From the IMG/VR virus record IMGVR_UViG_3300017917_001342, positions 434,001 through 498,000 of that record: a stretch of DNA of 64,000 bases. One strand, given 5' to 3'. Numbering within the stretch: position 1 is the first letter of the stretch; every line of letters starts with the position of its first letter. Of this stretch, positions 9,058-24,606 are shown one piece after another. The notes beneath the pieces are model-generated. The model was not told where the DNA came from. It did not search any database and was given only the letters and a program-made list of their open reading frames with translations. Made by a program: the position numbers and the translations under genes.

Positions 9058-9654
9058 ATGGCAATGATAGATTCGTCAGATCAATGGATTACAGGACATG
9101 TCCTGATTAAAGACTTGTCTACAAATGAAATATTAGTAGACAAGTTTAATGCTATCAACTACGAAAATTTCAGTATCAGTTTAGCAAGAACTATTGCAAA
9201 CAGACCTGATAGTTGGATACAGGAAATGTGTTTTGGTAACGGTGGCGCTCAAGTTAGCGAAACTGGTACTATAACATATCTACCTCCTAACGTAGTAGGA
9301 CAAACAGCAGAGTTATACAATCAAACCTATTATAAAGTTGTTGACGATCAAAGTCCATTGGACGTAGACCCGGCACAGAATTATATTAGCGTTTCTCACA
9401 TCGATGGCGCTACATTTACTGATGTAATAGTAACTTGTACCCTTGGATTATCCGAACCATCTGGACAAGATGCATTTGATACTGCAACAAATTTATCTGG
9501 AGATTACGTATTCAATGAATTAGGTCTAAAGGCTTACAGTTCTAATGGCCCGAATACAGGACGACTATTAAGTCACGTTATATTCAGTCCTGTACAAAAA
9601 AGTCTAAATAGACAAATTCAAGTAGTTTATACAATACGTATTCAAACAGTGTAA
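9058..9654 (+). CDS. Baseplate/tail-associated structural protein
   Basis: 198 aa with FGNGG...ITY...LYNQTYYKVVD and EPSGQDAFD...VFNELGL motifs; located in the structural cluster. Confidence 0.6.
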   Translation: MAMIDSSDQWITGHVLIKDLSTNEILVDKFNAINYENFSISLARTIANRPDSWIQEMCFGNGGAQVSETGTITYLPPNVVGQTAELYNQTYYKVVDDQSPLDVDPAQNYISVSHIDGATFTDVIVTCTLGLSEPSGQDAFDTATNLSGDYVFNELGLKAYSSNGPNTGRLLSHVIFSPVQKSLNRQIQVVYTIRIQTV

Positions 9655-10818: not shown

Positions 10819-11772
10819 ATGACTTATTCCGTTGGTAGTATAGCACAGGCATCAGATTACAACAGTTTTGTTGGTAACACTGCTGTTAATACTGCATATG
10901 CCAGTAGTGCTGCTGCACAGAATAAAATTTCTGCACTGATTGGTGTTGGATATGGTGACAGAGGTTATGGACAAACTTCTACTAACGTATCACCTACATC
11001 AACTGGACTAGTAATCACTGCGGGGCAGTGGAACAACCTGCGCAATGCAATGAGTACTGTGAACACGCATACTGGTTCTGCGTTGACATTACAACCTGCG
11101 GTTTCAACAACTACATTAATAGAAGCACAAAACGGTACACTAGGTAGACCAGATATTGCAACACTGTTAAGTACCTTGGATACCAATAGACTGAATGCCA
11201 GTATTTTACAAATGGCAGTATCAAGTGCATTAACCAGTACTCGTACCACAGCCTGGGGTACAATTATCAGGCATGAATTTACAGTTGCGTTCTTAGATGA
11301 AAACGCAGCTAGATACTTTTTTAACTCCAGTGGGGAAATTCGTTTTTCTGGATTTAGAACAGGTGGAACAGCCAGTACTATAAACGCTGCATGGACAGCA
11401 TTGTTGATACTAGTGGGTACTGTGAAATTTGGTGCAACATCTACTACCTATACTGGATCGGGTGGATTCCCAACTACTATAGGATATTATGATCTAACTG
11501 ATACATATCAGCAGGTATTTTCCCATAATGGTGCCGGTCCATATTACTCTAGCATCAGCTATATTATACAAGCTCGTAGAGAAAACTATGTTGGTGCTAA
11601 TGGCGGCAATGGATCAACAATTCGATTCGTAGTCACATTCAACGATTCATCTGCGTACACTTATTATGGTAATACAGTAGATGGTACCATTGTTAGTCAA
11701 ATTGACCAATACAAAGCAAGCGGTGTACTAACAATAGCGTCACCTACCTACACAACTGTAGTTAATCTATAA
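10819..11772 (+). CDS. Virion structural protein (tail-associated)
   Basis: 317 aa, S/T/G-rich, starts MTYSVGSIAQASDYN; last gene of the structural run. Confidence 0.55.
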   Translation: MTYSVGSIAQASDYNSFVGNTAVNTAYASSAAAQNKISALIGVGYGDRGYGQTSTNVSPTSTGLVITAGQWNNLRNAMSTVNTHTGSALTLQPAVSTTTLIEAQNGTLGRPDIATLLSTLDTNRLNASILQMAVSSALTSTRTTAWGTIIRHEFTVAFLDENAARYFFNSSGEIRFSGFRTGGTASTINAAWTALLILVGTVKFGATSTTYTGSGGFPTTIGYYDLTDTYQQVFSHNGAGPYYSSISYIIQARRENYVGANGGNGSTIRFVVTFNDSSAYTYYGNTVDGTIVSQIDQYKASGVLTIASPTYTTVVNL

Positions 11773-11774
11773 AT

Positions 11775-11803
11775 TTGACATCTGTTTAAAAATGCATCAT
11801 GCT
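11775..11803 (+). promoter_or_regulatory. Possible sigma70-type promoter (TTGACA-17-CATGCT)
   Basis: Perfect -35 and 17-bp spacer but an imperfect -10. Intergenic, ahead of the glycosyltransferase cluster. Confidence 0.4.
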
Positions 11804-11833: not shown

Positions 11834-12193
11834 ATGGATGAACGATTAAAGAAAGCGTTGGAGTTTTCTAACTACAGAATAAGTCTTTTTCAGAAAAAAG
11901 AAGACCTTAAACTCAACTTGTCTAACATGCTTACATATGCAAACAATGGTGGTATATTTAAAATAGATCAGTCATTGATATGTTTTGTAAAAGCTATTAT
12001 CGATCAAGGCAAAGAACGTATTGTATTGATCGATTCAAACGAAAATCCCATTGTTGTTACCGACATTAAAGAATTTTACAATGAAATATTCAATAGATAT
12101 TTCGAAGCAACTAATCTCTACCACACTGAATACACTAAACTTAAAAAAAGCCGCACTGTGGGCAGTTTACATGATTTCATAGAGGAAGAATAA
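11834..12193 (+). CDS. Hypothetical protein (119 aa)
   Basis: Clean ORF, first gene of an overlapping operon. Confidence 0.75.
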   Translation: MDERLKKALEFSNYRISLFQKKEDLKLNLSNMLTYANNGGIFKIDQSLICFVKAIIDQGKERIVLIDSNENPIVVTDIKEFYNEIFNRYFEATNLYHTEYTKLKKSRTVGSLHDFIEEE

Positions 12194-12194
12194 C

Positions 12195-13076
12195 GTGGAC
12201 AAAGGTTATCTAATGTTTGCGTATAATAACACCAGCATTGATTATATATCAATGGCACTATGCAATGCATTGCTTATCAAGAAACATTTAAAACACAACA
12301 ACGTTGCATTGGTTACCAACGAATATTCTATGACCTATTTAAAATCAATAACCAATGACGAATTAATTGAACGTGCATTTGATATTGTAATCTATGATGA
12401 TATAAAAGATGGTAACAACGCAATTAGAGTTTTTAAAGATACTCGTTATACCGAATTTAGAGACAAGTACCAAAATATAAACAGAATAAATGCCTACAAT
12501 ATAACACCGTTTGAACAAACTGTTGTATTAGACACAGATTATCTCATGTTAGATTCTAGCATGGACCTGGTTTGGGATTGTGAAGAAGATTTTATGTGTA
12601 ATAGAAAAACTGTTACATTGGATCATGAAAAAAACTCATTTGGTTTTAATAATCGTTTCAATGAAATGAGCATACCGCTGTATTGGGCAACAGCAATATA
12701 TTTTAAAAAATCTGAACGCAGTAGATCTGTCTTTGAACTTATTAATTTTATCAAAGAAAATTACGAATATTACGGCTATTTGTATAGTTTTCAACCATGC
12801 GGATATTTCCGTAATGATTTTGCATTGAGTATTGCTATACATATGATTGACAATTGTATGGAATACAACTCAGTTAAACCATTTCCAATTGATTATATTC
12901 TAGTAAGTTTAGATGTAGATGAAATACATTCTTTTAAAAATGGTAGATTCCATATAACATCTGAACCAGATCCCGGTCAATTCAAATTGCACAACACATT
13001 TAATAACGTTCATGTCATGAATAAACGTGCAATACTTCGATACAAAGATGAGATTATAAATTATGCCTGTTTATAA
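12195..13076 (+). CDS. GT-A fold glycosyltransferase-like protein (GT8-like)
   Basis: GYLMFAYNN...DYI, RINAYNITPFEQTVVLDTDYL (DxD motif), WATAIYF. Confidence 0.6.
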   Translation: MDKGYLMFAYNNTSIDYISMALCNALLIKKHLKHNNVALVTNEYSMTYLKSITNDELIERAFDIVIYDDIKDGNNAIRVFKDTRYTEFRDKYQNINRINAYNITPFEQTVVLDTDYLMLDSSMDLVWDCEEDFMCNRKTVTLDHEKNSFGFNNRFNEMSIPLYWATAIYFKKSERSRSVFELINFIKENYEYYGYLYSFQPCGYFRNDFALSIAIHMIDNCMEYNSVKPFPIDYILVSLDVDEIHSFKNGRFHITSEPDPGQFKLHNTFNNVHVMNKRAILRYKDEIINYACL

Positions 13077-13938
13077 AACACCTGATCCTACCAGAGGGTT
13101 TTTTACTATTGCGCAAAACAGTGGTGACAATGATTATGTTAGAATGGCATATGCATTGTCGTTGAGTTTAAAAGCAAGTCAATCTAAGGTTAAAAATCTC
13201 AGCATTGGAATTACACCCGGTACTACTGTGCCAGATGAGTATGCCTGGGCATTTGATCACATTGTAGAAATTCCCTGGGGCGACCACGCTGCCAATAGCG
13301 AATGGAAATTGGAAAATGAATGGAAAACCATTCATATGAGTCCCTATGATGAAACTGTAAAACTTGATGCAGATATGCTGTTTTTCAACGATATTAATCT
13401 ATGGTGGGATAAAATGGCAATAGAAGATTTTACATTCTGCAATCAAGTGTTGTCTTATAGGGCCGAAGTTGTTAACAGTGATTATTATAGAAAAACTTTT
13501 ACTTCTAATAACCTACCAAATATATACACAGCTTTTATGTTTTTCAAAAAAACACCAATCTGTTATGACCTCTTTAGTCTCGCTAAAATTGTTTATTTTA
13601 ACTGGGAACGATTTTTTGAACAGTATCTGTTGCCAGAAGACCGACCAAAATACCCAAGTACAGATGTGATATTTGCATTGGTTCTTAAAATTTTTGATAT
13701 AGATCAGACGCTATACAAACGCAGATCTATTCCAACCTTTACACATATGAAACCAAAATTGCAAGGATGGAATATAGCAGATGTAAAAAATTGGCAATCT
13801 AAAATTCCTGTATTTTTTACACCAGAATTGCAATGTAGAATAGGAAATCATTTGCAATTTTTCCCGTTGCATTATCACAATAAAACTTTTGTCACCGATA
13901 ACATATTGAGCTATTATGAACAACAACTTAATACCTGA
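13063..13938 (+). CDS. GT-A fold glycosyltransferase-like protein (paralogue of 12195)
   Basis: GFFTIAQN...DYVRMAYAL, SPYDETVKLDADMLF (DxD motif), YTAFMFF. Confidence 0.6.
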   Translation: MPVYKTPDPTRGFFTIAQNSGDNDYVRMAYALSLSLKASQSKVKNLSIGITPGTTVPDEYAWAFDHIVEIPWGDHAANSEWKLENEWKTIHMSPYDETVKLDADMLFFNDINLWWDKMAIEDFTFCNQVLSYRAEVVNSDYYRKTFTSNNLPNIYTAFMFFKKTPICYDLFSLAKIVYFNWERFFEQYLLPEDRPKYPSTDVIFALVLKIFDIDQTLYKRRSIPTFTHMKPKLQGWNIADVKNWQSKIPVFFTPELQCRIGNHLQFFPLHYHNKTFVTDNILSYYEQQLNT

Positions 13939-14458
13939 TTTAACCAATGCCTGGGCCTGGTTTGAAAAAGACACTGGTTTAATAAAACACGTGAGTTTTA
14001 TTGACAACCAGTTATCGGAAGATAGCGGTCTAACTAAGATTAAAATTGACCCTAAAACTGCAACTGACATTATCACAGGTGTTAGCAATTTCTCACATTA
14101 CAAAGTTGTACAAAAAAACAATGAATATGTTGCAATTTACATAGCGTCTAACCTACTGAGTATGATTTCAGTTTTTTGGTCATTGAAAGAACTTAAACCA
14201 TTTGATCGAAAATGGTTACTATTTACTGAACCCGAAAGTCCTATTAGATTAGTGACTACTGAAACCGGATACGACATGTATGTAGTATCTTATGTACAAA
14301 ACGGTAAACTTTATATTACCATTAAAGAAGACCCAAGTTGGTTAGTAAAAACTGTAGACATTTCATCTGCTGTAGCTAATAATGGTTTAGGACCAATACC
14401 AATTTCATTAGACATGAGTAGAAATTACAGTGTATATGTGAGGCAAGATGCAGCGTAA
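13916..14458 (+). CDS. Hypothetical protein (180 aa)
   Basis: Overlaps both neighbours in the operon; no recognised motif. Confidence 0.65.
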   Translation: MNNNLIPDLTNAWAWFEKDTGLIKHVSFIDNQLSEDSGLTKIKIDPKTATDIITGVSNFSHYKVVQKNNEYVAIYIASNLLSMISVFWSLKELKPFDRKWLLFTEPESPIRLVTTETGYDMYVVSYVQNGKLYITIKEDPSWLVKTVDISSAVANNGLGPIPISLDMSRNYSVYVRQDAA

Positions 14459-15353
14459 TATTATTGAATTTGATTTTGTATTTTTAAGTTACGATGAACC
14501 AAACGCAGAAATGCTATATGCAGAACTGTTAAACGTTGTACCGTGGGCAAAGAGAGTACACGGAGTCAAAGGATTTGATGCTGCGCACATTGCATGCGCA
14601 GATGCGTCCGACACTGATTTTTTTGTAACAGTTGATGGTGACAATCGCATAGATCCAAAATTTTTAGACATTTCTATCGAAATTGAAGATTATCAGAATG
14701 ACCATGCATGGACTTGGGCTAGTCGCAATCACATAAACGGATTGGTATATGGCAATGGCGGTTTAAAATTATGGAGTAAATCGTTTGTGTACAACATGAA
14801 AAGCCATGAAAATAGCAGTACAGATGCTGGTAAGGTAGATTTCTGTTGGAATCACAAATACCATGATGTGTTCGGTACGTACAGTACTACTATGGCAAAT
14901 GGCAGTGCCTATCAAGCATGGAGAGCAGGATACCGCGAAGGTGTCAAAATGAGCCTCAATAACGGCAAACGAGTAAACCCGCCGGACTTTGCAAGAACTA
15001 TATGGGTATACAACCTACACAAACTTTTAATTTGGTGCAGTGTAGGTGCAGACGTTACCAACGGCATATGGAGTATTTTAGGTGCTAGACAGGGTGCATA
15101 CGATTGCAATTTAACTGATTGGGATTATACTCAGATACATGACTACAATTGGTTCAAGTCTAAATGGGATACGATAAAAGACTGTGATCCTGCTGCTAAA
15201 GCAATGGAGTTTGGTAAGGACCTAAGAAAAGGGTTAAACATCGACATTGCAGATTTTGATGCACAACAAAGTAAATTTTTTAAGAGTGTGTATATCAATC
15301 CGCCAAGACCACTAATTGGCTACGATATGATTTCTCATATATCTGCAACATAA
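14448..15353 (+). CDS. GT2-like glycosyltransferase-fold protein, paralogue 1
   Basis: FLSYDEPNAE...VHGVKGFDAAH...TVDGD, NGLVYGNGGLKLW, AWRAGYREGVK. Confidence 0.6.
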   Translation: MQRNIIEFDFVFLSYDEPNAEMLYAELLNVVPWAKRVHGVKGFDAAHIACADASDTDFFVTVDGDNRIDPKFLDISIEIEDYQNDHAWTWASRNHINGLVYGNGGLKLWSKSFVYNMKSHENSSTDAGKVDFCWNHKYHDVFGTYSTTMANGSAYQAWRAGYREGVKMSLNNGKRVNPPDFARTIWVYNLHKLLIWCSVGADVTNGIWSILGARQGAYDCNLTDWDYTQIHDYNWFKSKWDTIKDCDPAAKAMEFGKDLRKGLNIDIADFDAQQSKFFKSVYINPPRPLIGYDMISHISAT

Positions 15354-15371
15354 TTTAAATCATTTACAAAA

Positions 15372-16535
15372 TTGAGCAGTTTAATGTACGATATAGTATA
15401 TGTAAAACTGTCAGACAATTTAGATGGGTATAATTCGTTAAAACAACAGTACCCACATATTATATTGCTTGACGGTTATACAGACTTAATAGACACTATG
15501 CATAGAGTAAAATCATTGTGTTTTACTAATATGTATTGGTTGGTATCAGACTGCGACGATGACAACCTAAATACTATATTGCAATGGCGGCCCTGGGATT
15601 GTGATAAACTGGTACCATATTTTTGGAAAAACAGCAAACACAGTGATGCCAACTTAGATGATGTCAAGACAGGCAACAACACATTAACACAGGGTGCATA
15701 TCTCTTACCGTTGGATTATCAGTTCAACAGTGAAGAAATTAAAAACCACAGACTGTTAGATATTGCAATTATCAGCGGCAACAGTCCTGGGTCGTTACCC
15801 TTTGACATATTTTTTGTTAGCTATAACGAACCAAATGCAGATGAAAATTGGCAGCGTGTCGTTGATAGATTTCCTTACGCTAGACGAGTACATGGTATTA
15901 AAGGTATTGACAAGGCACACAGGCGCTGTGCTGAACTTAGTCGGTCTGGTATGTTTTGGACAATCGATGCCGATGCTGTGATACATGACGACTTTAATTT
16001 TGATTATGTTCCTGACATAAAAGAACGACCGTATCTATACATATGGCACAGTTTGAATCCTGTTAACGGATTAGAATATGGCTGGGGTGCAGTTAAGTTA
16101 TGGCCTACCAAACTGGTTTTAGATTTCGACGGCAATTGGTTAGATTTTACTACAACTGTGGGCAACATTCGTATGATGCCAGAAGTTGTTGCAACCAGTG
16201 CATTTAATATCGATGCGTGGACATCCTGGCGAAGTGGATTTAGAGAAACAATCAAACTCTGTGTTAATGTATCCAATGGTGATCACGAAGAAAGTCTATA
16301 CAGACTCATAACCTGGTTGACTGTTGCAAAATCGGTACCGTATGCTAATGATACAAGAAACGGTGCAATAGAAGGGGTTGAATTCTTTTTGTCTGCTACA
16401 TCTCTATCTGATCTATTAGTAATCAATGATTTTGATAAACTAAAACCCATATTCAATAATAGAAAAACAACTGTGGTTTTTGATACACCGTTAGACAAGC
16501 TTGTTGAAAAATTAAAGGCCCATTGTCTTGTATGA
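15372..16535 (+). CDS. GT2-like protein, paralogue 2 (degenerate N-terminal copy plus intact C-terminal copy)
   Basis: C-terminal half has FFVSYNEPNADENW...VHGIKG...TIDAD...NGLEYGWGAVKLW...WRSGFRE. N-terminal half is a diverged copy (YDIVYV...MYWLVSD). Confidence 0.6.
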   Translation: MSSLMYDIVYVKLSDNLDGYNSLKQQYPHIILLDGYTDLIDTMHRVKSLCFTNMYWLVSDCDDDNLNTILQWRPWDCDKLVPYFWKNSKHSDANLDDVKTGNNTLTQGAYLLPLDYQFNSEEIKNHRLLDIAIISGNSPGSLPFDIFFVSYNEPNADENWQRVVDRFPYARRVHGIKGIDKAHRRCAELSRSGMFWTIDADAVIHDDFNFDYVPDIKERPYLYIWHSLNPVNGLEYGWGAVKLWPTKLVLDFDGNWLDFTTTVGNIRMMPEVVATSAFNIDAWTSWRSGFRETIKLCVNVSNGDHEESLYRLITWLTVAKSVPYANDTRNGAIEGVEFFLSATSLSDLLVINDFDKLKPIFNNRKTTVVFDTPLDKLVEKLKAHCLV

Positions 16536-17220
16536 TATTGTTTTTATAAGCTACAACGAAACCAATGCAGAAGAAAACTGGGAACTGCTAAAACGTAGAA
16601 TGCCTAGAGCTATGAGATTGCATGGTATAAAAGGTTTACATGCTGCACACGCAACTGCCGCAGCTATGGTATCTACTGACATGTTTTATGTTGTTGACGG
16701 CGATGCAGAAATACTGGATAATTTTGATTTTGACTATAATGTAGATGATCACAAAAAACAGTGTGTCCATGTGTTCAGAGCTAAAAATCCAGTAAACGAT
16801 CTTGTGTATGGGTACGGTGCAGTAAAACTACTGCCTACTAAAGATGTGTTATCTATTACGTCAACTAAACTCAAACCAGATGTTACCACAAGCATCAATC
16901 GACGTTATGAAATAATTCATAAAATATCTAACATAACCAGATTCAATACCAATGAATTTAACACTTGGAGAAGTGCATTTAGAGAATGTGCTAAACTTGC
17001 TAGTAAAATAATACCAGAACAAGTAGACACAGAAACAGAACATCGTTTGAAAATCTGGTGTAATGTTGGGTCTGATCGACCCTTTGGTGAATGGTCTATT
17101 TTGGGTGCGCAAGCAGGTAAAAATTTCGGATTAACCTATAGAAACGATGTTGATCGTATGATGATGATTAACAACGTAGACACAATGCGTCTACTCTATG
17201 ATAGATACAAGTTGGTGTAA
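16528..17220 (+). CDS. GT2-like protein, paralogue 3
   Basis: YDIVFISYNETNAEENW...LHGIKG...VVDGD...YGYGAVKL...WRSAFRE. Confidence 0.6.
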   Translation: MYDIVFISYNETNAEENWELLKRRMPRAMRLHGIKGLHAAHATAAAMVSTDMFYVVDGDAEILDNFDFDYNVDDHKKQCVHVFRAKNPVNDLVYGYGAVKLLPTKDVLSITSTKLKPDVTTSINRRYEIIHKISNITRFNTNEFNTWRSAFRECAKLASKIIPEQVDTETEHRLKIWCNVGSDRPFGEWSILGAQAGKNFGLTYRNDVDRMMMINNVDTMRLLYDRYKLV

Positions 17221-18112
17221 TATGAACACTGCACCTTTAACTGATAGCTTCACTGTTAACACTCTTGATATATTTTTTATCAGCTATGACGAACCTAATG
17301 CAGAAACCAATTGGAAACATCTACAAGAAATTACCAATAACCGAGCAAAGCGTATTCATAATGTAAAAGGTTTCGACAAAGTACATAAACTCTGTGCTAA
17401 ATCAAGTACCACACGGCGCCTCGTTATTGTAGACGGTGACAGTTGGGTAAATTCCAACATCTTAGATGTCACGTTAGACGATGCCGAACACAAGACTGCA
17501 TGTTTTAGTTTTAAAAGCATTAATTTTATCAATGGTCTGGAATACGGCAACGGTGGTATAAAAATCTGGGACAAGAACACACTGTTAGATTCCAATACAC
17601 ACGAATCATCGAATACAACAGACTTTTGCTGGGATATACCATATTATCAAATTGACCAAATAAGTGGTACTACCGTTCAAAACGCTAGCCCATATCAAGC
17701 ATGGCGGGCAGGTTACCGCGAAGGTGTTAAATTAACATACCTAAACGGTAAACCCATTAACAACTGGAACAGTGATCGCAAAAAACTATGGAAAGGCAAT
17801 TTGAGTAAATTGTCAGTGTGGTGCTCAGTTGGTCGTGATATAGAAAACGGAATCTGGGCAATACTAGGTGCTAGACAAGGACTGTGTGAAACATTAGGGT
17901 CTGAGCTAGATACTACTGTTATCAATGACTACGACTGGTTCAATACTAAATGGCAAACCGTACAAGACGGCAATCCAGAATCTTTGGCAATACAATATGC
18001 AGCTACTCTCGACACACATTATGATTTTTATATACCAGAACTTGATGTTAAGAGCAGCAAATGGTTTAAGAACACCTATATCAATCCTGCAAGACAGGGG
18101 CTAATGAAATGA
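17198..18112 (+). CDS. GT2-like protein, paralogue 4
   Basis: DIFFISYDEPNAETNW...IHNVKG...IVDGD...NGLEYGNGGIKIW...AWRAGYREGVK; closest to paralogue 1. Confidence 0.6.
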   Translation: MIDTSWCNMNTAPLTDSFTVNTLDIFFISYDEPNAETNWKHLQEITNNRAKRIHNVKGFDKVHKLCAKSSTTRRLVIVDGDSWVNSNILDVTLDDAEHKTACFSFKSINFINGLEYGNGGIKIWDKNTLLDSNTHESSNTTDFCWDIPYYQIDQISGTTVQNASPYQAWRAGYREGVKLTYLNGKPINNWNSDRKKLWKGNLSKLSVWCSVGRDIENGIWAILGARQGLCETLGSELDTTVINDYDWFNTKWQTVQDGNPESLAIQYAATLDTHYDFYIPELDVKSSKWFKNTYINPARQGLMK

Positions 18113-19179
18113 CAATGCAATTACACGATAAAAATATTTTAGTTCAGTTACATAATGATCCTGCAATATTAAGTTTCATTCTTAAATTAACTGACAGCGA
18201 TAAAGTTGCATTCAAACAGTTATTGGTTTGGCCTCGATCATTGATTAGTATGATGTCTAAAAGTGACACTAATGTTATTGAATTTTTAAACAAATGTACT
18301 CAAGATGAAATGGTATATGTAAAAGACATAGTGTCGTGGCCTCAAACACTGTTTGCACTATTGACAAAAAACAATAACAAAGTACTGAAGTTTCTAAATA
18401 GGATTTCTGATACTGAACGTTTTAGCATTGAACAAATATTAGAATGGTCGCCAGTACTGTTGAAAACGCTGCGTGACACACCAGAACACGTTACCGTAAT
18501 ACATCGTATGTGGGATATCGTACCCGACATGCCACGGTTCCTTAAAACCTATTTTGCAGTATACACGCATCCAAACTTCAACAATAAAGAAATGATGGAT
18601 GCCTTTAGTAATGGACAGCTTAATAGCAAACTATGGTTAATTGATACTGTTGAGTCATTGAACATATCGTTGAACAGAGTATGGACGCTGTGTGGGTGGA
18701 TAGGCACATTGGCCTATTTGATGTTTATTCGTAGACAGAGTCTTGACATAACTCATATTCGCAGTTTTGATATAGATGATAACTGTCACGAATTAGCAGA
18801 TACAATGAACAGAGAGCAGGTAGTAGAAGGTTGGGATTTTAAAGCATCTACATTAGACGTGAATCTATTGCAATATGACGACTTTACATTTAACACTATG
18901 AGACGCAATGGTACTGTTCAGCCTGTGTTTGATTCGGCTGACACTATAATCAACACCAGTTGTGACCATATGGGCAACTCGGACGTTTGGTGGAACAATA
19001 TTCCAAGTGGTAAATTGGTTATATTACAAAACAACGATTTCTTTGAACATGACGAACACAGCAATTGTTGTTTTTCGTTAGAGCAATTTAAGTTAAAATA
19101 TCCTATGCAACAAATTCTATATGAAGGTGCTCTTGATTGCACAATATACAATAGATTTATGTTGATAGGCTATAAATGA
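18109..19179 (+). CDS. Class I SAM-dependent methyltransferase-like protein with three N-terminal 36-aa repeats
   Basis: C-terminal DAFSNGQLNSKLW...LCGWIG...RSFDID...IINTSCDH Rossmann-like pattern. Trp at residues 41/77/113 marks the repeat. Confidence 0.55.
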   Translation: MTMQLHDKNILVQLHNDPAILSFILKLTDSDKVAFKQLLVWPRSLISMMSKSDTNVIEFLNKCTQDEMVYVKDIVSWPQTLFALLTKNNNKVLKFLNRISDTERFSIEQILEWSPVLLKTLRDTPEHVTVIHRMWDIVPDMPRFLKTYFAVYTHPNFNNKEMMDAFSNGQLNSKLWLIDTVESLNISLNRVWTLCGWIGTLAYLMFIRRQSLDITHIRSFDIDDNCHELADTMNREQVVEGWDFKASTLDVNLLQYDDFTFNTMRRNGTVQPVFDSADTIINTSCDHMGNSDVWWNNIPSGKLVILQNNDFFEHDEHSNCCFSLEQFKLKYPMQQILYEGALDCTIYNRFMLIGYK

Positions 19180-20519
19180 CAGTGGATTTGTCAACTTTAA
19201 CAATTAGGCAATTACAAGAAGAATCTGCAAGAGTACTTGCCGCAGGAGATGGCTTTGGCAACAATGAATTGGTAAAATTCAATAAAGTTGCTAACCATAA
19301 CAGTCATGATTGGTATCGTGCTGTTATCGCATGGTACATAGAGCAGTATGGCAATTTGCCAAGTGTTGCAGGACCAGGTAAACAGGTTAAGTTGCTATTA
19401 CAAAACACACCGACTGTGCAGCAACCTGTTTCACAGATATATCCCTATGATAAAATCAGTGTAGTACATCTTGAAATCACATCTAAGTGCAATGCCAGTT
19501 GTCCGATGTGCGCAAGAAATAAATTCGGCGGACCTGTAAATGATCTGTTGCCACTAACTGAACTCAGTCTCATTGATATACAGCGTATCATGCCAATTGA
19601 GTTTGTACAGCAATTAACCAGACTTTATATGTGTGGTAACTATGGTGACCCTATTGTTGCCGCTGACATGTTAGAAGTGTGCGAATGGCTAAGGTCTATA
19701 AACCCTGGAATAAAATTAGGCATACACACAAATGGTAGTGCAAAAACCGAGGGGTGGTGGAAACAACTTGGCAAATTGCTTTGTAAAAAAGGTGATTATG
19801 TAAAATTTGGTATAGATGGCTTACAAGACACAAACCATATCTATCGCAGAGGCACCTATTGGCAAAAGCTTATGAATAACGCACAGGCATTTATCAACGC
19901 TGGTGGTATTGCGCAATGGGAATTTATTGTTTTTAAACACAACGAACATCAAATCGAAGAAGCTGAACAACTGAGTAAATCTATGGGTTTTCAACAGTTC
20001 AGAGTTAAGAAGACTGGCAGGTTTTTCAGTAATACGCGATTAGAAGGTAAAGACCGTCAAGAAGTATGGAATAGAAACGGCGACGTAGAATACTATATCG
20101 AAAAACCAACTAATCCTGTGTATACTAATGACAGTTTAGAAAAAGAACAACAGCTTGTAGACACCTTCGGCAGTATGCAAAATTATGTAGATCAAACCTG
20201 TGTTAAGTGTAAAGTTGCTGAAGATCATAGCATTTACATATCTGCTGAAGGATTGGTGTTCCCATGCTGCTGGACTGCCAATCAAATGTACATATGGTAT
20301 ACGCCGTTTAAGAAGAATGAAATATGGTCGTTGTTAGACGGTGATACTACACAGATAAGTGCATTAGAAAATGACCTGAAATCTATAATAGAGGGTAAGT
20401 TTTTCAATGACATAGCTAGTAGCTGGTCGAAGTCTAACACTAGTGACGGTAAACTAAAAGTCTGTGCTAAAACCTGTGGTACAGGCTTTGACCAATTTGC
20501 AAGCCAATTTAAAAAGTGA
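19176..20519 (+). CDS. Radical SAM protein with C-terminal SPASM/twitch-like domain
   Basis: CNASCPMC (CxxxCxxC), CGNYGDP, HTNG, C-terminal C...GLVFPCCW...CAKTC. Confidence 0.85.
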   Translation: MTVDLSTLTIRQLQEESARVLAAGDGFGNNELVKFNKVANHNSHDWYRAVIAWYIEQYGNLPSVAGPGKQVKLLLQNTPTVQQPVSQIYPYDKISVVHLEITSKCNASCPMCARNKFGGPVNDLLPLTELSLIDIQRIMPIEFVQQLTRLYMCGNYGDPIVAADMLEVCEWLRSINPGIKLGIHTNGSAKTEGWWKQLGKLLCKKGDYVKFGIDGLQDTNHIYRRGTYWQKLMNNAQAFINAGGIAQWEFIVFKHNEHQIEEAEQLSKSMGFQQFRVKKTGRFFSNTRLEGKDRQEVWNRNGDVEYYIEKPTNPVYTNDSLEKEQQLVDTFGSMQNYVDQTCVKCKVAEDHSIYISAEGLVFPCCWTANQMYIWYTPFKKNEIWSLLDGDTTQISALENDLKSIIEGKFFNDIASSWSKSNTSDGKLKVCAKTCGTGFDQFASQFKK

Positions 20520-21922
20520 ACACTATGACAAACGATTTACCAAGTCCAACTTTTTGTGTATTACCTTGGATACACCTAAGCAGTAGACCAGACGGTGCTA
20601 TGCGTGTTTGCTGCACAGCCAATGCCAGCAGTGTTCAAGATCCTGACAGTACTAAAAAAAGCGGCGGCGGTCAGATAGGTGTACTACGCACTGCTGATGG
20701 TACACCAGCCAATCTCAACAACACTACACTAATGGAAGCGTGGAACAACGATTACATGCGCAATGTTAGAAAGATGATGTTGCGAGGCGAAAAACCACCT
20801 AGCTGTTTAAAGTGCTATAAAGAAGAAGCCGCAGGAGTACAAAGCAAACGCAATTGGGAAACTGCTTATTGGATAGGTCAGCTTGGTTTGGATGATATTA
20901 TAGGAGACACTGCCGAAGATGGATCTGTAAGTCCTAGAATACGTTATATAGATCTCAGACTTGGTAGCAAGTGTCAGCTGGCATGTGTAATGTGTAGTCC
21001 CCATGATTCCAGTGGGTGGGTCAAGGAATGGACACAGATGCATCCTCAGATTCAAAATCAACGTCTCAAAGAAAGTTGGAGTTGGGAAAACAAAGGCAAA
21101 GCCCATGGTGCCAGTTACAATTGGCATTTGAATAATCCTGTGTTTTGGGAACAGCTTTATGACCAAATACCGCATATGAAGCAGCTTTATTTTGCAGGCG
21201 GCGAAAGTACTATCATCGACAAGCACTATACACTGCTAGAAGAAGTAATTCGCAGAGGCTATGCCGATAAAATAGAATTGCGTTACAACAGCAACGCAGT
21301 TGAACTACCAAACAAATTGTTTATGCTTTGGGATCAGTTTAGAGAAGTAAAGTTTCATTTCAGTATTGATTCGATCGGTGCAAAAAACGATTATATCAGA
21401 TATCCCAGTAACTGGGACCAACTGGTTACCAATATGGAATTATTAGACAGCACTGCTGACAACATAACGGTGACCACTGCGGTAACAGTTATGGCATTGA
21501 ACATCTATTACATACCAGACATGATAAAGTGGAAAATGCAAAAGAATTTTAAAAAATTCAACGCATGGCCCAATGGTGCAGGAATGATAAATTGGCATTT
21601 AGCGTATTGGCCGCCACAATTAAATGTTAAGGTTTTGCCTAAGTGGGCAAAACAAATGGTTAGAGAAAAATTTGAAGAATTTTTTACATGGCTTGATGAA
21701 AATTGGAAACAAACAACAGGATTAGATGAAACAGTCAGTAAGGACACATTCATGTCTGCTGGGTATGGTATAAAGCGTTTACGAAGTCTACTAGACTTTA
21801 TGGATAGTGAAGATTGGAGTGAACGCATGCCTGAATTGCAAGAGTGGATATGTCTTATAGACAAACAGCGAAATCTTGATTTTAAACAGATATTTCCGGA
21901 GATGGCCGGATTATTAGATTGA
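20516..21922 (+). CDS. Radical SAM protein with N-terminal Cys-rich SPASM/twitch-like domain
   Basis: N-terminal FCVLPW...VCC...CLKCY; CQLACVMC; FAGGE; YNSN. Confidence 0.85.
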   Translation: MNTMTNDLPSPTFCVLPWIHLSSRPDGAMRVCCTANASSVQDPDSTKKSGGGQIGVLRTADGTPANLNNTTLMEAWNNDYMRNVRKMMLRGEKPPSCLKCYKEEAAGVQSKRNWETAYWIGQLGLDDIIGDTAEDGSVSPRIRYIDLRLGSKCQLACVMCSPHDSSGWVKEWTQMHPQIQNQRLKESWSWENKGKAHGASYNWHLNNPVFWEQLYDQIPHMKQLYFAGGESTIIDKHYTLLEEVIRRGYADKIELRYNSNAVELPNKLFMLWDQFREVKFHFSIDSIGAKNDYIRYPSNWDQLVTNMELLDSTADNITVTTAVTVMALNIYYIPDMIKWKMQKNFKKFNAWPNGAGMINWHLAYWPPQLNVKVLPKWAKQMVREKFEEFFTWLDENWKQTTGLDETVSKDTFMSAGYGIKRLRSLLDFMDSEDWSERMPELQEWICLIDKQRNLDFKQIFPEMAGLLD

Positions 21923-21955
21923 GGAAAAACATGCAATTTGGACTACCAGGTACCA

Positions 21956-21961
21956 TAAATA
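21956..21961 (+). promoter_or_regulatory. Late promoter core TAAATA
   Basis: ATAAATA lies upstream of an AAGGGG RBS and the ATG at 21991. Confidence 0.5.
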
Positions 21962-21990
21962 GTAGTGTAAGCTCGCAAGGGGTAACTGTT

Positions 21991-22413
21991 ATGGCAACTT
22001 CTCAAAAAAAGACCACTGCTGCTGACGAATACTGGAACGAGATATTCGATAGTTTAGTAATTGAAAACGAACCTCCAATTGAATACATTAAAAGGGTAAT
22101 AATCGTAACAAAAGATGGCAATCAGTACAAAGTAAGTGCTCAACATTTTGCTCAAATAATTGAACACGAAAAACACTTGCATCCAGATGAAAGTGAAATA
22201 CGCAGTTGTAAAATGAGCATAGACTATAACAAACTGCGATATGATGTAGAAAATTGGGCAGGCCAGCTTTTGAGTGATTTAGAAGGTGTGCCGTTTGAAA
22301 AAGAACAGCCAGTTAAACCTACGAGAAAACCTAGAGCAGTTAAATCAAAACCTGAGACTGCCGAAGAACAACCGACAAAAACACGTCGTAATAAACCTAA
22401 GCCGTCAGAGTAA
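21991..22413 (+). CDS. Hypothetical protein with basic K/P/R-rich C-terminal tail
   Basis: Start moved from the track's 21919 to the ATG at 21991, which has an RBS and late promoter. Confidence 0.65.
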   Translation: MATSQKKTTAADEYWNEIFDSLVIENEPPIEYIKRVIIVTKDGNQYKVSAQHFAQIIEHEKHLHPDESEIRSCKMSIDYNKLRYDVENWAGQLLSDLEGVPFEKEQPVKPTRKPRAVKSKPETAEEQPTKTRRNKPKPSE

Positions 22414-23640
22414 CGGCTTAGGTAACCATTTTGCCAGCAATGGCATTGATTCGTGTACGTCACGTTTGAATAGTTTGTCTTCTAAATAGACACTGTTAGC
22501 AAAATCCTGCCATGTTGGTATACCCATTGAAGGTAAGCCATAAGGTAATTCGTTTATGTCACCCAACATGTAATTAATTGGATGACTACCCACTGCTTTA
22601 GCCCGTGCATATTTCACAGGGTCGTTTATACTAGCAAGATAATCATTCCACTTTGACAAAATCTCCTGTTTAACTTCGTCCGGTGCAACTCTTGGGCTTA
22701 TTATCAATGGTGACTGTACTATTGCACTGCTTAGATCTATTGACAAATTGTTATCATAGAGATAGTCTATAGTTTCAGATAGATAAAACAATTGATACAC
22801 ACTACAGGTTATCTCAGAGTATACATCATACCCTGCTGCACGAAATGCTCTCATGTTTTTTTCAACAACTGACCAATTGGCACCTTGTCTGAAATAATTG
22901 TAACGTTCTAACACCCCATCGGTGCTAACAACTACTACAACCTTTTTGAATTTTTTCCAAAGATCAAACACGTTGTATTTTTTATACTCTGTAACTGTGC
23001 CATTGGTTACATATAACAGTTGTATGTGTGCAGCATGCTCTTCTGGTATTGCTGCGATAAATTCATAATGCTGTTGCTGATACAGTGTTTCACCTCCTGC
23101 AAATGATATGTGCATGAGATTAGGAACTAGATTTTTTAAAATGTCGTCTATGTATTCCTGTCGTAGATTTTTTCCGTCAACTGGTTCTGCATCCTGCCAT
23201 AATAACGGTTGCCATAGCGTCGGATTGCGCTTTAGCAATGCTGCCCATTTGCTGCTGTATGCAGGGCTGCAATGCCTGCATGACAAATTGCATTCGTTGC
23301 CAAATCTAATTTCGATAGTTTTTAAATGCGATATTTCGCCAGTAGTATGGTCATAGTCATTGAGATTTAATCCAAATTCAGGATGCTGCAACCCTTCAAG
23401 TCTTGTACTAATAAGACCACTGGCTTCAAAATCTCTGCACGACCCGCAGCCTTCTGGCCACTCACCGTTCATCAATGTCTGTCTATGAGTTCTTGCTTCT
23501 TGCGAATTAACAATTTCACTCATTAATTGTTGTTTATGATCACCTAGTTTGGCGACACATCTAAAACACGACGATACGCGGTCTTGTTGTAGTTGATGGT
23601 TTAGATGTCCTAATGCATATGCACAGATTTTTGGAGTCAT
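22405..23640 (-). CDS. Radical SAM protein with N-terminal Cys-rich domain
   Basis: N-terminal C...SSCFRC...CGSC; CNLSCRHC; FAGGE; VTNGT; STDG. Confidence 0.85.
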   Translation of the reverse strand: MTPKICAYALGHLNHQLQQDRVSSCFRCVAKLGDHKQQLMSEIVNSQEARTHRQTLMNGEWPEGCGSCRDFEASGLISTRLEGLQHPEFGLNLNDYDHTTGEISHLKTIEIRFGNECNLSCRHCSPAYSSKWAALLKRNPTLWQPLLWQDAEPVDGKNLRQEYIDDILKNLVPNLMHISFAGGETLYQQQHYEFIAAIPEEHAAHIQLLYVTNGTVTEYKKYNVFDLWKKFKKVVVVVSTDGVLERYNYFRQGANWSVVEKNMRAFRAAGYDVYSEITCSVYQLFYLSETIDYLYDNNLSIDLSSAIVQSPLIISPRVAPDEVKQEILSKWNDYLASINDPVKYARAKAVGSHPINYMLGDINELPYGLPSMGIPTWQDFANSVYLEDKLFKRDVHESMPLLAKWLPKPLL

Positions 23641-23720: not shown

Positions 23721-24116
23721 ATGAAATTATGGCAATCCATCGAAAATACTTTAAAGTCTCTACCAAACGCAGCAGAAGGCTATGAGCAGCAAATAGACAT
23801 ACCTGAATTTACATTTCTTGGTGTAAAGAATCAGCCAGATTTTGGACATATTAAAATATGGTTTCATGGCAAAGAAAAAACCATTGAACTCAAAAGCCTA
23901 AAAGAATATCTGCTGCAATATCGAGACACTGTTATCAGCTACGAACGTGCAACAGATGTAATGTATAAACATCTAATGGAAGCCTATGCTCCGTTTAGAT
24001 TGCGTATGGAAATTGCGTTTAGGCCGCGCGGTGGCATCAGCAGTAAAATGGTAGTAGACAGCGATTGGGGTCATCTAGGTGGCACTGATAAACTTTGGCA
24101 ACATCACAAGGACTAA
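23721..24116 (+). CDS. queF: QueF-family T-fold protein lacking the catalytic Cys
   Basis: PEFT, QPDF, ELKSLKEY, SYE and PRGGIS align with B. subtilis-type QueF, but EFTSLCP reads EFTFLGV. Confidence 0.75.
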   Translation: MKLWQSIENTLKSLPNAAEGYEQQIDIPEFTFLGVKNQPDFGHIKIWFHGKEKTIELKSLKEYLLQYRDTVISYERATDVMYKHLMEAYAPFRLRMEIAFRPRGGISSKMVVDSDWGHLGGTDKLWQHHKD

Positions 24117-24119
24117 GCT

Positions 24120-24605
24120 ATGATACGTGCAATACTAGCCTGCGACGACAACTGGGGCATTGGTAAAAATGGCACACTGCCTTGGCCACATAACAGTGCA
24201 GATCTCAAATGGTTTAAAGAATCAACAACAGGTGGCGTTGTTGTTATGGGTAAAACTACCTGGGACAGTTTACCAGAAAAAAGTAAACCATTGCCGAACA
24301 GAAATAACATTGTGGTTACATCATCTATTAAAGATAAAGATGGCCCGTATCATTTTGTTAAGTTTGAAAATGCCAAAGACCATATTGTGTCTATGAGTAA
24401 ACTACAACCAGTTTGGATCATCGGTGGTGCAAAATTAGTTGAAAGCATGATAGATATTATGGATGAACTTTGGTTAAATCGAATCGCTGGTAACTTTGAC
24501 TGTGATACCTTTTTGCCAAGCGAGTTAATAATGAGACAGTTTGTGCAAGCAGATGTTGCACAACATAATACTGAATTAAACATAACACGATGGGTTAGGA
24601 GATAA
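24120..24605 (+). CDS. folA: Dihydrofolate reductase
   Basis: GIGKNGTLPW...DLKWFK, VVMGKTTWDSL, PLPNRNNIVV, WIIGGA, CDTF. Confidence 0.95.
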   Translation: MIRAILACDDNWGIGKNGTLPWPHNSADLKWFKESTTGGVVVMGKTTWDSLPEKSKPLPNRNNIVVTSSIKDKDGPYHFVKFENAKDHIVSMSKLQPVWIIGGAKLVESMIDIMDELWLNRIAGNFDCDTFLPSELIMRQFVQADVAQHNTELNITRWVRR

Positions 24606-24606
24606 C

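What the first reader, a model, noticed from the sequence alone, without database searches (positions are those of the whole stretch)
12195..18112. Six tandem glycosyltransferase-like genes in two paralogous families directly behind the baseplate genes
Seen: two GT8-like DxD proteins, plus four paralogues (five domain copies) sharing FxSYxEPNA...HGxKG...VDxD...YGxGxxKL...WRxxxRE, translationally coupled, with no terminator recognised after the structural genes. Established: some mycobacteriophages glycosylate their virions. Inference: a dedicated assembly line that builds a multi-sugar glycan on the virion or on the host surface. The sigma70-like promoter at 11775 leaves the timing open.
Basis: partly seen in the sequence, partly recalled or inferred. 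Interest (0 to 1): 0.62.

Follow-up and report, generated by a model that had tools for sequence, protein, structure and literature searches.

The report
Conserved jumbo-phage glycosyltransferase gene module
Behind the tail-fibre genes of a 518-kb phage lies a widely conserved but unannotated set of sugar-transferring enzymes, including a protein family with no existing database model, which probably decorates a protein (most likely part of the virus particle) with a multi-sugar chain.

Summary
The six glycosyltransferase-like genes are real. Two (A, B) fold like family-8 glycosyltransferases (glycogenin Z 15.6), and their DxD aligns with glycogenin's metal site. Four (P1-P4) are paralogues of a large family with no Pfam or NCBIfam model; its N-terminal domain has a GT-A fold with a DxD.

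The "fifth domain copy" is a degenerate half-domain. The sigma70 promoter has no statistical support.

The window is not from a mycobacteriophage. It comes from a 518,643-bp jumbo phage related to Agrobacterium phage Atu_ph07 and Ralstonia phage RsoM2USA.

The core g119-A-B-gX-Plong-Pshort follows the fibre genes in 80 related viral contigs and in RsoM2USA. This genome has duplicated the P pair.

Elsewhere P domains are fused to each other, to the methyltransferase-like g356, and to GT-B glycosyltransferases. Four bacterial loci put the GT-B fusions beside C39-ABC exporters; three also encode double-glycine leader peptides. P domains also sit beside nucleotide-sugar genes and radical SAM genes.

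I conclude it is a glycan assembly module, probably acting on a protein. The acceptor is untested. DNA glycosylation is less likely: the only ThyA homologue is a canonical thymidylate synthase.

The parts
9058..9654 (+). g198, a baseplate or virion structural protein (context)
   Evidence: phrog_11259, E 3e-73. 93 jumbo-phage records hold homologues, some annotated as baseplate or structural protein. RsoM2USA ORF356 was confirmed in virions by mass spectrometry (PMC8504454).
9696..10817 (+). g373, a tail-fibre-like protein (context); present in 1-4 tandem copies in relatives
   Evidence: Tail-fibre PHROGs; homologue in Atu_ph07; multiple copies in related loci.
10819..11772 (+). g317, a Ser/Thr/Gly-rich virion protein (context); a candidate acceptor
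   Evidence: Homologues in PA5oct-like phages are annotated as virion structural protein or tail pin, and one is present in RsoM2USA; sequence.
11834..12193 (+). g119, the first gene of the conserved module; function unknown
   Evidence: Found before A in 67 of 80 related loci. Among cultured phages it occurs only in RsoM2USA. No hit to PDB sequences or NCBIfam.
12195..13076 (+). A, a GT8-like (retaining GT-A) glycosyltransferase with DxD at residues 113-115; GTG start
   Evidence: AF2 model pLDDT 93.5. The top 50 Foldseek hits are all GT8/GT24. VIA Z 15.6 to glycogenin, 14.1 to LgtC, 13.9 to GlyE. The DxD aligns with the DAD of glycogenin. Homologues cover the N-terminus that the shorter stored gene call removes.
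13063..13938 (+). B, a second GT8-like glycosyltransferase and paralogue of A; DxD at residues 102-104
   Evidence: 25% identity to A, E 1e-7. It keeps all invariant columns of alignment A2. 51% identity to RsoM2USA ORF352.
13916..14458 (+). gX, a conserved non-GT module member (150-220 aa in relatives); function unknown
   Evidence: An HMM iteration recovers it at this position in 76 of 79 sequences collected between B and P-long, including RsoM2USA. Only a sub-threshold FHA-domain hint (E 0.05). The Atlas search found nothing informative.
14448..15353 (+). P1, the P-long orthologue: a GT-A-like N-terminal domain (residues 2-156, DxD 63-65) plus a helical C-terminal domain
   Evidence: AF2 model pLDDT 92.6. 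VIA Z 10.4-8.9 to B4GALNT1, STIV A197, SunS, SpsA and PBCV-1 A64R. Foldseek finds TarP and SunS at E about 4e-4. BFVD hits are nearly all annotated glycosyltransferases. 45% identity to RsoM2USA ORF350.
15372..16535 (+). P2, a degenerate N-terminal half-domain (residues 1-142) followed by a complete P-short-type domain (143-371); the start is probably the ATG at 15384
   Evidence: The architecture of truncated half-domains followed by a full domain recurs in P0307, P0385 and P0388.
16528..17220 (+). P3, the P-short orthologue (TTG start)
   Evidence: 42.5% identity to RsoM2USA ORF348; all five motifs present.
17198..18112 (+). P4, a second P-long copy (paralogue of P1, 44% identity)
18109..19179 (+). 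g356: N-terminal repeats of about 35 aa, then a Rossmann-type, methyltransferase-like core (residues 163-356); functionally linked to P
   Evidence: Fused C-terminally to P-long+P-short in P0241 (E 2e-47), and two copies follow the multi-P protein in L190. Weak Methyltransf_25, Spermine_synth and MJ0882 hits only.
19176..20519 (+). rSAM1, a radical SAM enzyme
   Evidence: PF04055 E 6e-9. A 48%-identical homologue follows the g356-like genes in L190.
20516..21922 (+). rSAM2, a radical SAM protein with an N-terminal twitch domain
   Evidence: NF033640: 419 bits against a cut-off of 170. Homologues are inserted between P-long and P-short in 25 of 80 loci and in RsoM2USA.
21919..22413 (+). g164, the last gene of the co-directional run; function unknown
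   Evidence: conserved in the closest relatives.
22405..23640 (-). rSAM3, a second twitch-domain radical SAM protein, convergent with the run
   Evidence: NF033640: 255 bits.

Best explanation
The region is a conserved jumbo-phage glycosylation module. Its core is six co-transcribed genes. g119 is a small protein of unknown role. A and B are two GT8-like, probably retaining, metal-dependent glycosyltransferases. gX is a second small protein of unknown role. P-long and P-short are a pair from a previously unmodelled GT-A-like family with a DxD. In this genome the P pair has been duplicated (P1/P3 are the orthologues; P2/P4 are the extra pair). The run continues into a methyltransferase-like protein and radical SAM enzymes. 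The proposed mechanism is that soluble cytoplasmic enzymes use nucleotide sugars to add sugars one after another, then tailor them (methylation, radical chemistry), on a polypeptide acceptor. The most likely acceptor is a fibre or baseplate protein encoded just upstream, giving a glycosylated virion. Shown here: the folds, the motifs, the paralogy, the conservation of the module, and the natural fusions and neighbourhoods. Inferred: catalysis, donor sugars, order of action and acceptor. My sub-confidences are about 0.8 for glycosyltransferase function, about 0.5 for a protein or peptide acceptor, and about 0.4 for a virion protein specifically.
For: Folds. A matches glycogenin at Z 15.6 and rmsd 3.8 over 212 residues; the top 50 Foldseek hits are all GT8/GT24; a sequence profile finds only glycogenin in the PDB and aligns the DxD. 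The N-terminal domain of P matches GT-A enzymes at Z 10.4-8.9 over about 140 residues, and viral-library hits are almost all annotated glycosyltransferases. Nineteen columns, including D63 and D65, are invariant across 43 P proteins including all four window copies.

Module. g119-A-B-gX-Plong-Pshort follows the fibre genes in 80 of 80 IMG/VR loci wherever the contig reaches that far, and in RsoM2USA.

Functional links of P elsewhere. Single-chain Plong+Pshort fusions exist. A Plong+Pshort+g356 fusion exists. GT-B(GT28/GT1)+P fusions were found in 5 of 5 proteins tested. All four loci examined put those fusions next to a C39-peptidase ABC exporter, and three also have double-glycine-leader, Cys/Ser/Thr-rich precursor peptides. 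In a Tateyamaria chromosome P lies next to GT4 and GT28-like genes. A six-domain P protein lies next to a carbamoyltransferase, a CMP-sugar synthetase, an aldolase, g356-like genes and radical SAM genes.

Sugar supply. The genome also encodes two NAD-epimerases, an NDP-sugar pyrophosphorylase-like protein and four GT2 hits.

Position. The module lies on the same strand as MS-confirmed virion genes, 61 nt after them, with no terminator-like site between.
Against: No activity, donor or acceptor has been measured for any member. None of the window's GT-like proteins reaches a Pfam, NCBIfam or PDB sequence threshold. The N-terminal domain of P also resembles nucleotidyltransferases such as MobA and IspD at Z about 9. 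Its C-terminal domain has no match. Related cultured phages with the same baseplate and fibre genes lack the module (Atu_ph07) or lack its genes (PA5oct-like phages), so it is not needed to build those proteins. The combination of a TarP-like GT-A with a GT8-like GT-A is exactly what known phage DNA-glycan pathways use, and in relatives a thymidylate synthase gene follows the module. The peptide link comes from bacterial fusion proteins, not from the phage. No precursor peptide or exporter was seen in the window.
Confidence: 0.45

Rival explanations
1. Host-envelope modification. The enzymes add sugars to LPS core, O-antigen precursors or another cell-surface glycoconjugate at the inner face of the membrane. 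This would mask receptors, giving superinfection exclusion or keeping progeny from adsorbing to debris.
For: GT8 includes LPS-core transferases, and LgtC matches A at Z 14.1. P matches the phage-borne wall-teichoic-acid enzyme TarP, as well as RmlT and GtrB.
Against: No membrane segments, flippase, polymerase or lipid-carrier genes were found in the module. The phages are large lytic myoviruses. The strict linkage is to fibre genes, not to lysis or early genes. The bacterial links of P are to peptide-export clusters.
Confidence: 0.15
2. DNA glycan hypermodification. The P enzymes put a first sugar on a modified base in phage DNA, and the GT8-like enzymes extend it, protecting the genome from nucleases.
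For: Published phage DNA glycosyltransferases include TarP/JGT-like GT-A enzymes, plus GT8-like enzymes that add secondary sugars (bioRxiv 10.1101/2023.12.21.572611). The top Foldseek PDB hit of P is TarP. A thymidylate synthase gene (ThyX in relatives, ThyA here) lies a few genes downstream.
Against: The genome has a single ThyA-family gene. It is 52% identical to E. coli ThyA and keeps all 12 active-site residues, including L143, D169 and N177, which distinguish methyl-, hydroxymethyl- and hydroxy-forming enzymes (criteria from PMC13326640). It passes the NCBIfam equivalog cut-offs and sits next to DHFR. No C5-methyltransferase was found. No Tet/JBP hit was found, although the control for that search was silent. 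No TGT/DpdA was found. P lacks the R...DDD...EDY/F motif set described for those enzymes.
Confidence: 0.12
3. A RiPP-like or small-molecule product. The glycosyltransferases, the methyltransferase-like protein and the radical SAM (twitch/SPASM) enzymes together mature a peptide or metabolite that is not part of the virion, for example a glycosylated peptide acting on the host or on competitors.
For: Bacterial GT-B+P fusions sit in glycocin-like clusters with double-glycine precursors and C39-ABC exporters. P resembles the glycocin transferases SunS and ThuS. Twitch/SPASM radical SAM enzymes are classic peptide maturases. They are inserted between P-long and P-short in 25 of 80 loci, in up to six copies.
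Against: No leader-bearing small ORF, protease or exporter was seen in the window. The core module in most relatives has no radical SAM gene. The genome carries at least 22 radical SAM genes in four clusters, so adjacency here may be incidental.
Confidence: 0.12
4. Not glycosyltransferases. The P proteins are nucleotidyltransferases or non-catalytic GT-A-fold proteins, for example assembly factors for the fibres.
For: MobA, IspD and other cytidylyl/guanylyltransferases match P at Z 9.5-8. Foldseek TM-scores are low, about 0.3. No sequence-level link to any GT family was found.
Against: P has the PxYNE-like segment after strand 1 and a DxD after strand 4, not the N-terminal GxGxR loop of nucleotidyltransferases (family knowledge). 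There are recurrent fusions to bona fide GT-B domains. Nineteen residues are invariant across paralogues.
Confidence: 0.06

Closest known systems
CAZy family GT8 (glycogenin, LgtC, GlyE, the LARGE1 xylosyltransferase domain)
   Same: A and B share the whole-domain fold (Z 15.6-13.6 over 212-233 residues), the N-terminal strand-helix signature, and a DxD aligned with the metal-binding DAD of glycogenin.
   Different: Neither window protein (A or B) matches PF01501; one of the 48 members of A2 does, at E 0.0012. Identity to solved members is 9-17%. A and B occur as an adjacent paralogous pair inside a phage structural-gene region.
GT2-type GT-A enzymes acting on polypeptides or polymers (SunS/ThuS glycocin S-glycosyltransferases, TarP, PBCV-1 A64R, SpsA)
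   Same: The N-terminal domain of P (residues 2-156) superposes at Z about 9-10. It has an acidic/Asn segment after strand 1 and a DxD after strand 4. Bacterial P fusions sit in glycocin-like clusters.
   Different: No match to PF00535. An HGxKG segment replaces the usual acidic residue after strand 2. The helical C-terminal domain carrying WRxxxRE has no structural match. The proteins occur as long/short pairs and in tandem arrays of up to six domains.
Mycobacteriophage virion glycosylation (Che8-type glycosyltransferase genes; Freeman et al. 2023, as cited in PMC12619734)
   Same: Several phage glycosyltransferase genes lie beside structural genes. The Che8 glycosyltransferase appears among the weak structural matches to P (E 1.4e-3).
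   Different: Unrelated phage lineage and unrelated enzymes. No glycan has been shown on these virions. Here the module also carries two unknown small proteins, a methyltransferase-like protein and radical SAM enzymes.
Phage DNA glycan hypermodification clusters (bioRxiv 10.1101/2023.12.21.572611; PMC13326640)
   Same: They combine TarP/JGT-like GT-A and GT8-like GT-A enzymes, in the neighbourhood of a thymidylate-synthase-family gene.
   Different: No enzyme able to make a hydroxylated pyrimidine was found, the ThyA is canonical, and the motif set is different.

Membership tests
GT8 (Pfam Glyco_transf_8 / CAZy GT8), for A and B | Glycogenin-type GT-A fold over the whole catalytic domain | tested here: met
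   AF2 model pLDDT 93.5. VIA Z 15.6 (glycogenin), 14.1 (LgtC), 13.9 (GlyE). The top 50 Foldseek hits are all GT8/GT24.
GT8 (Pfam Glyco_transf_8 / CAZy GT8), for A and B | DxD metal/nucleotide-sugar motif at the position of the DAD of glycogenin | tested here: met
   The profile alignment puts the family's llDaDyLvl on glycogenin's fmDADtLVL. The motif is invariant in 48 sequences including B.
GT8 (Pfam Glyco_transf_8 / CAZy GT8), for A and B | Sequence match to the family model above threshold | tested here: not met
   No Pfam hit for A or B. Only 1 of 48 homologues touches PF01501, at E 0.0012. The profile against PDB gives E 0.06.
GT8 (Pfam Glyco_transf_8 / CAZy GT8), for A and B | Retaining transfer from an NDP-sugar | not testable with these tools
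   Needs an enzyme assay.
GT2-like GT-A glycosyltransferases (PF00535), for P1-P4 | GT-A Rossmann-like nucleotide-sugar domain | tested here: met
   Residues 2-156 match at Z 10.4-8.9 over about 140 residues to GT-A enzymes. Nucleotidyltransferases score similarly.
GT2-like GT-A glycosyltransferases (PF00535), for P1-P4 | DxD at the end of the fourth strand | tested here: met
   (V/I)D(G/A)D occurs in all four copies. It lies at the end of strand 58-63 of the model. D63 and D65 are invariant.
GT2-like GT-A glycosyltransferases (PF00535), for P1-P4 | Sequence match to the family model | tested here: not met
   No Pfam, NCBIfam or PHROG hit. The profile against PDB found nothing relevant.
Glycocin-type peptide glycosyltransferase systems (SunS-like) | Glycosyltransferase clustered with a double-glycine-leader precursor and a C39-peptidase ABC exporter | tested here: inconclusive
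   Met for the bacterial GT-B+P fusions: an exporter in 4 of 4 loci and precursors in 3. Not seen in the phage window. Small ORFs in the window were not searched systematically.
Phage DNA glycosyltransferases (JGT/TarP-like GT-A) | R...DDD...EDY/F active-site motif set | tested here: not met
   P has VDGD and no EDY/F among its conserved columns. The motif is as described.
Phage DNA glycosyltransferases (JGT/TarP-like GT-A) | A co-encoded source of a hydroxylated pyrimidine (a ThyA-like hydroxymethylase or hydroxylase, or a C5-MT plus a TET-like dioxygenase) | tested here: not met
   There is one ThyA-family gene, with all 12 canonical active-site residues. No C5-MT was found. No Tet_JBP hit was found, but the control for that search was silent.
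Phage virion glycosylation systems | Glycan covalently attached to virion proteins | not testable with these tools
   Only the position beside MS-confirmed virion genes is known.

The most novel reading that the evidence does not exclude
The P proteins are a new family of polypeptide glycosyltransferases shared between jumbo phages and bacterial glycocin-like peptide clusters. In the phage they work with twitch-domain radical SAM enzymes and a methyltransferase as a post-translational modification line. This line would install tailored glycans on tail-fibre or baseplate proteins (or on the small module proteins g119 and gX), changing how the virion meets its host.
Probability: 0.25. Interest if true: 0.75.

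Novelty: new variant of a known kind. Interest (0 to 1): 0.57.

Why it matters
Phage-encoded glycosylation is known for DNA, for host surfaces and, recently, for mycobacteriophage virions. This module has not been annotated anywhere: every source name seen for its proteins is "hypothetical protein".

It is nevertheless abundant. The P family has more than 8,000 clusters at 90% identity and 1,679 clusters at 50% identity. The module holds a fixed position behind the fibre genes in a whole clade of environmental jumbo phages.

It defines a GT-A-like family that has no model in Pfam or NCBIfam. It ties that family to peptide-export clusters in bacteria.

It is also directly testable, because Ralstonia phage RsoM2USA carries the module and can be grown.

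If the acceptor is a virion protein, this would extend virion glycosylation to Gram-negative jumbo phages, with consequences for host recognition and particle stability.

Tried and rejected
- Sequence searches of all seven ORFs against Pfam, NCBIfam, PHROGs and PDB sequences found nothing usable. The only hit was an unnamed PHROG for B.
- A megablast of the region against 50,697 phage records found no match.
- Complex prediction on P1 with P3 gave no verdict (score 0.00). It counts neither for nor against pairing. The case for pairing rests on natural fusions and adjacency only.
I did not pursue reads by another route and did not use read laying, so there are no expression data.
- Profiles of g119 and gX against PDB found nothing significant. 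The best hit was to FHA domains at E 0.05 for gX. The Atlas search for gX was uninformative.
- Look-ups of P0306 and P0304 returned contigs too short to give context.
- The promoter and terminator scans gave counts no different from shuffled sequence. TATAAATA is enriched in non-coding DNA (16 of 26 sites touch the 11% that is non-coding). The site before g119 is TATAAATT, a variant that is not enriched. Timing therefore stays open.
- The moraphage paper (PMC12619734) concerns a different lineage.
- Atu_ph07 was checked with the family HMMs and lacks the module.
- No alternative genetic code was needed.

Full report
WHAT IS THERE

The window is bases 434,001-498,000 of a 518,643-bp virus record with direct terminal repeats. 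It has about 40% GC, dipping to 33% over 12-14 kb, where A and B lie.

The + strand between 11,834 and 22,413 carries an uninterrupted run of genes that abut or overlap:
- g119 (11834-12193)
- A (12195-13076)
- B (13063-13938)
- gX (13916-14458)
- P1 (14448-15353)
- P2 (15372-16535)
- P3 (16528-17220)
- P4 (17198-18112)
- g356 (18109-19179)
- two radical SAM genes (19176-20519 and 20516-21922)
- g164 (21919-22413)

Upstream on the same strand are a giant ORF of at least 2,968 aa, g198, g373 and g317.

g198 has homologues in 93 jumbo-phage records. The closest are Agrobacterium phage Atu_ph07 (62% identity) and Sinorhizobium phage Phosso. Some homologues are annotated as baseplate or structural protein. 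The RsoM2USA homologue (ORF356) was identified in virions by mass spectrometry (PMC8504454).

g373 matches tail-fibre families. g317 matches a PA5oct virion structural protein.

CHECK OF THE OBSERVATION

P1-P4 are real paralogues (E 1e-81 to 3e-27). Each has the five motifs in the same order. A and B are distant paralogues, each with a DxD.

It also missed g119, which precedes A.

The "fifth domain" is the first 142 residues of P2. The family HMM does not detect it (E 1.3). BLASTP aligns it, in register, with the starts of P domains in four other proteins (E 2e-4 to 4e-3). Truncated half-domains placed ahead of one full domain are a recurrent architecture in the family, as in P0307, P0385 and P0388. 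I accept it as a degenerate half-copy that lacks the SYxEPNA and HGxKG motifs.

The sigma70-like site has no statistical support (70 sites against 64 +/- 10 in shuffles).

Start codons: homologues support the GTG start of A at 12195. The stored gene call (P0121, 274 aa) is shorter than the 293-aa ORF and covers 94% of it, so it removes the conserved N-terminal stretch. P3 must start at the TTG at 16528 to keep its first motif. P2 more likely starts at the ATG at 15384.

FOLDS

A was modelled from a 48-sequence alignment (pLDDT 93.5).
- Its 50 best Foldseek hits in the PDB are all GT8 or the related GT24 (glycogenin at E 1e-6).
- An independent all-against-all alignment gives Z 15.6 to glycogenin (212 residues, rmsd 3.8), 14.1 to LgtC, 13.9 to GlyE and 13.6 to LARGE1.
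- A sequence profile of the family finds only glycogenin in the PDB (E 0.06). It aligns the DxD with glycogenin's DAD.

P1 was modelled from a 43-sequence alignment (pLDDT 92.6).
- It has an N-terminal domain (residues 2-156) that matches GT-A enzymes at Z 10.4-8.9. These include B4GALNT1, STIV A197, SunS, SpsA and PBCV-1 A64R.
- It also matches nucleotidyltransferases at Z about 9.
- Foldseek ranks TarP and SunS first (E about 4e-4).
- In the viral structure library the hits are almost all annotated glycosyltransferases.
- The helical C-terminal domain has no match.
- The DxD lies at the end of the fourth strand. Nineteen columns are invariant in all 43 sequences, including the four window copies. 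All four copies therefore look catalytically intact.

THE MODULE IS CONSERVED, NOT PECULIAR TO THIS GENOME

The P family is very large. All but 8 of the 8,000 scored candidates pass E 0.001 among the 90% clusters. A full profile search finds 1,679 clusters at 50% identity. Every source name seen is "hypothetical protein".

Among 50,697 cultured phage records, only Ralstonia phage RsoM2USA has A, B, g119 and P. There the order is the same, with a twitch-type radical SAM gene between P-long and P-short.

In 80 IMG/VR loci the order is g198, g373 (1-4 copies), g317, g119, A, B, gX, P-long, 0-6 radical SAM genes, P-short. This order holds wherever the contig extends far enough. P-short lies within 10 kb in 72 of the 80 loci. 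gX is recognised by HMM iteration in 76 sequences, including RsoM2USA.

Only the window genome and its closest relatives (L009, L010, L013) have four P genes. P1 and P3 are the orthologues of the usual pair.

Atu_ph07 has the same baseplate and fibre genes but lacks the module. The module is therefore accessory to that structural block.

WHAT THE P FAMILY IS LINKED TO ELSEWHERE

(a) Natural single-chain fusions of P-long with P-short exist: P0242, P0244, P0245, P0247 and P0248.

(b) P0241 fuses P-long, P-short and a g356-like domain (E 2e-47).

(c) About twenty clusters of proteins of about 740 aa carry a P domain after some 420 N-terminal residues. In all five that I scanned, that N-terminal part is a GT-B domain of the GT28/GT1/EryCIII type.

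In all four loci examined, such a fusion lies next to a C39-peptidase ABC exporter. In three of them, small ORFs just upstream have double-glycine leaders followed by Cys/Ser/Thr-rich cores. This is the known layout of glycocin clusters (established knowledge; see PMC12457901 and PMC6405829).

(d) In the Tateyamaria armeniaca chromosome a lone P gene lies beside GT4 and GT28-like genes. P also occurs in isolate genomes of Roseibium, Ruegeria, Sulfitobacter and others.

(e) A protein with six P-type stretches (five truncated, one complete) is followed by two g356-like genes, a homologue of rSAM1 (48% identity), a CMP-sugar synthetase, an aldolase and further radical SAM genes. It is preceded by a carbamoyltransferase.

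These links place P in glycan-building systems. They tie g356 and the radical SAM genes to it functionally. At least in bacteria, they point to polypeptide acceptors.

g356 has a Rossmann-type core. Its methyltransferase matches are sub-threshold only.

The phage genome can also supply or alter nucleotide sugars. It has two NAD-epimerases, an NDP-sugar pyrophosphorylase-like gene and several GT2 genes.

WHICH ACCEPTOR

Position and conservation next to fibre genes, the soluble nature of the enzymes and the peptide link of P favour a protein, most simply a virion protein. This is inference.

The strongest rival is DNA. Published phage DNA-glycan pathways combine TarP/JGT-like GT-A enzymes with GT8-like extenders, and they associate with thymidylate-synthase homologues.

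I tested that rival.
- The genome has one ThyA-family gene.
- That gene is 52% identical to E. coli ThyA. It keeps all twelve residues within 6 A of C5, including L143, D169 and N177 (criteria).
- It passes the NCBIfam thymidylate synthase equivalog cut-offs and is preceded by DHFR.
- No C5-methyltransferase, TGT/DpdA or Tet/JBP hit (control silent) was found.
- P lacks the motif set described for those enzymes.

DNA glycosylation is therefore less likely, though an unknown acceptor base cannot be excluded.

Host-envelope modification and a RiPP-like product remain open.

LIMITS

- No expression data could be obtained.
- The complex prediction gave no verdict.
- g119, gX, g356 and the C-terminal domain of P remain without a fold assignment.

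VERDICT

The finding is better described as a conserved, unannotated six-gene glycosylation module of a jumbo-phage clade, expanded here and extended by tailoring enzymes, and containing a GT-A-like family that no database models. The acceptor is the open question, and it is testable in RsoM2USA.

Noticed in passing
whole genome G000: about 87-101 kb, 144-152 kb, 376-387 kb and 453-457 kb (the last cluster is window 19176-23640): The phage encodes at least 22 radical SAM proteins in four clusters. The two scanned in the window belong to the twitch-domain family NF033640. Such an expansion in one phage is unusual and unexplained.
   Followed up: partly
window 55900-61448 (+): A second sugar-related cluster: an NDP-sugar pyrophosphorylase-like gene (55900-56622), a RuBisCO large-subunit-like protein (56938-58161, PF00016 E 2.5e-39), an unknown gene, a DUF7796 protein and two GT2+TPR proteins (59314-60387 and 60351-61448).
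   Followed up: partly
loci L170 (7390-13102), L137, L165 and L153: Bacterial clusters with double-glycine-leader, Cys/Ser/Thr-rich precursor peptides, a GT-B+P fusion glycosyltransferase of about 740 aa, an HlyD-like protein and a C39-peptidase ABC exporter. These are possibly an undescribed class of glycocin-like peptides.
   Followed up: partly
window 23721-25452 (+): A QueF-like protein (just below the NCBIfam cut-off), dihydrofolate reductase and a canonical thymidylate synthase lie in a row. No TGT/DpdA gene was found in the genome, so the role of the QueF-like gene is unclear.
   Followed up: partly
window 12001-14000: GC falls to 0.33 over A and B, against about 0.40 around them. This may point to a separate origin for the GT8-like pair.
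   Followed up: no
window 28103-29386 (-): An HNH endonuclease gene (phrog_1314, E 7e-115) lies in the most GC-rich stretch of the window (0.49). It is possibly a mobile element.
   Followed up: no
whole genome G000; window 11767-11774: TATAAATA, the T4 late-promoter consensus, occurs 26 times. Sixteen of these touch the 11% of the genome that is non-coding. The site before g119 is the variant TATAAATT, which is not enriched.
   Followed up: partly
loci L090-L100, L106, L109, L151, L162, L169 and L048: Contigs carrying the full phage module are filed in public MAGs labelled Bifidobacterium, Flavobacteriales, Polynucleobacter, Fischerella, Rickettsiales and Neomarinimicrobiota, and in one giant-virus MAG. 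These are probably binning errors.
   Followed up: partly
window 12195-13076: The stored gene call for A (P0121, 274 aa) is 19 residues shorter than the 293-aa ORF, which implies a start at the internal ATG (12252) and loss of the conserved first strand. Homologues support the GTG at 12195.
   Followed up: yes
loci L190 and L191: A 1,225-aa protein with six P-type stretches (five truncated, one complete) sits in a cluster with a carbamoyltransferase, a CMP-sugar synthetase, an HpcH-type aldolase, two g356-like genes and three radical SAM genes.
   Followed up: partly
window 3-8909 (+): A giant ORF of at least 2,968 aa runs off the window start. It is positionally equivalent to the 4,449-aa structural protein of Atu_ph07 and to proteins of about 3,700 aa in relatives.
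   Followed up: no
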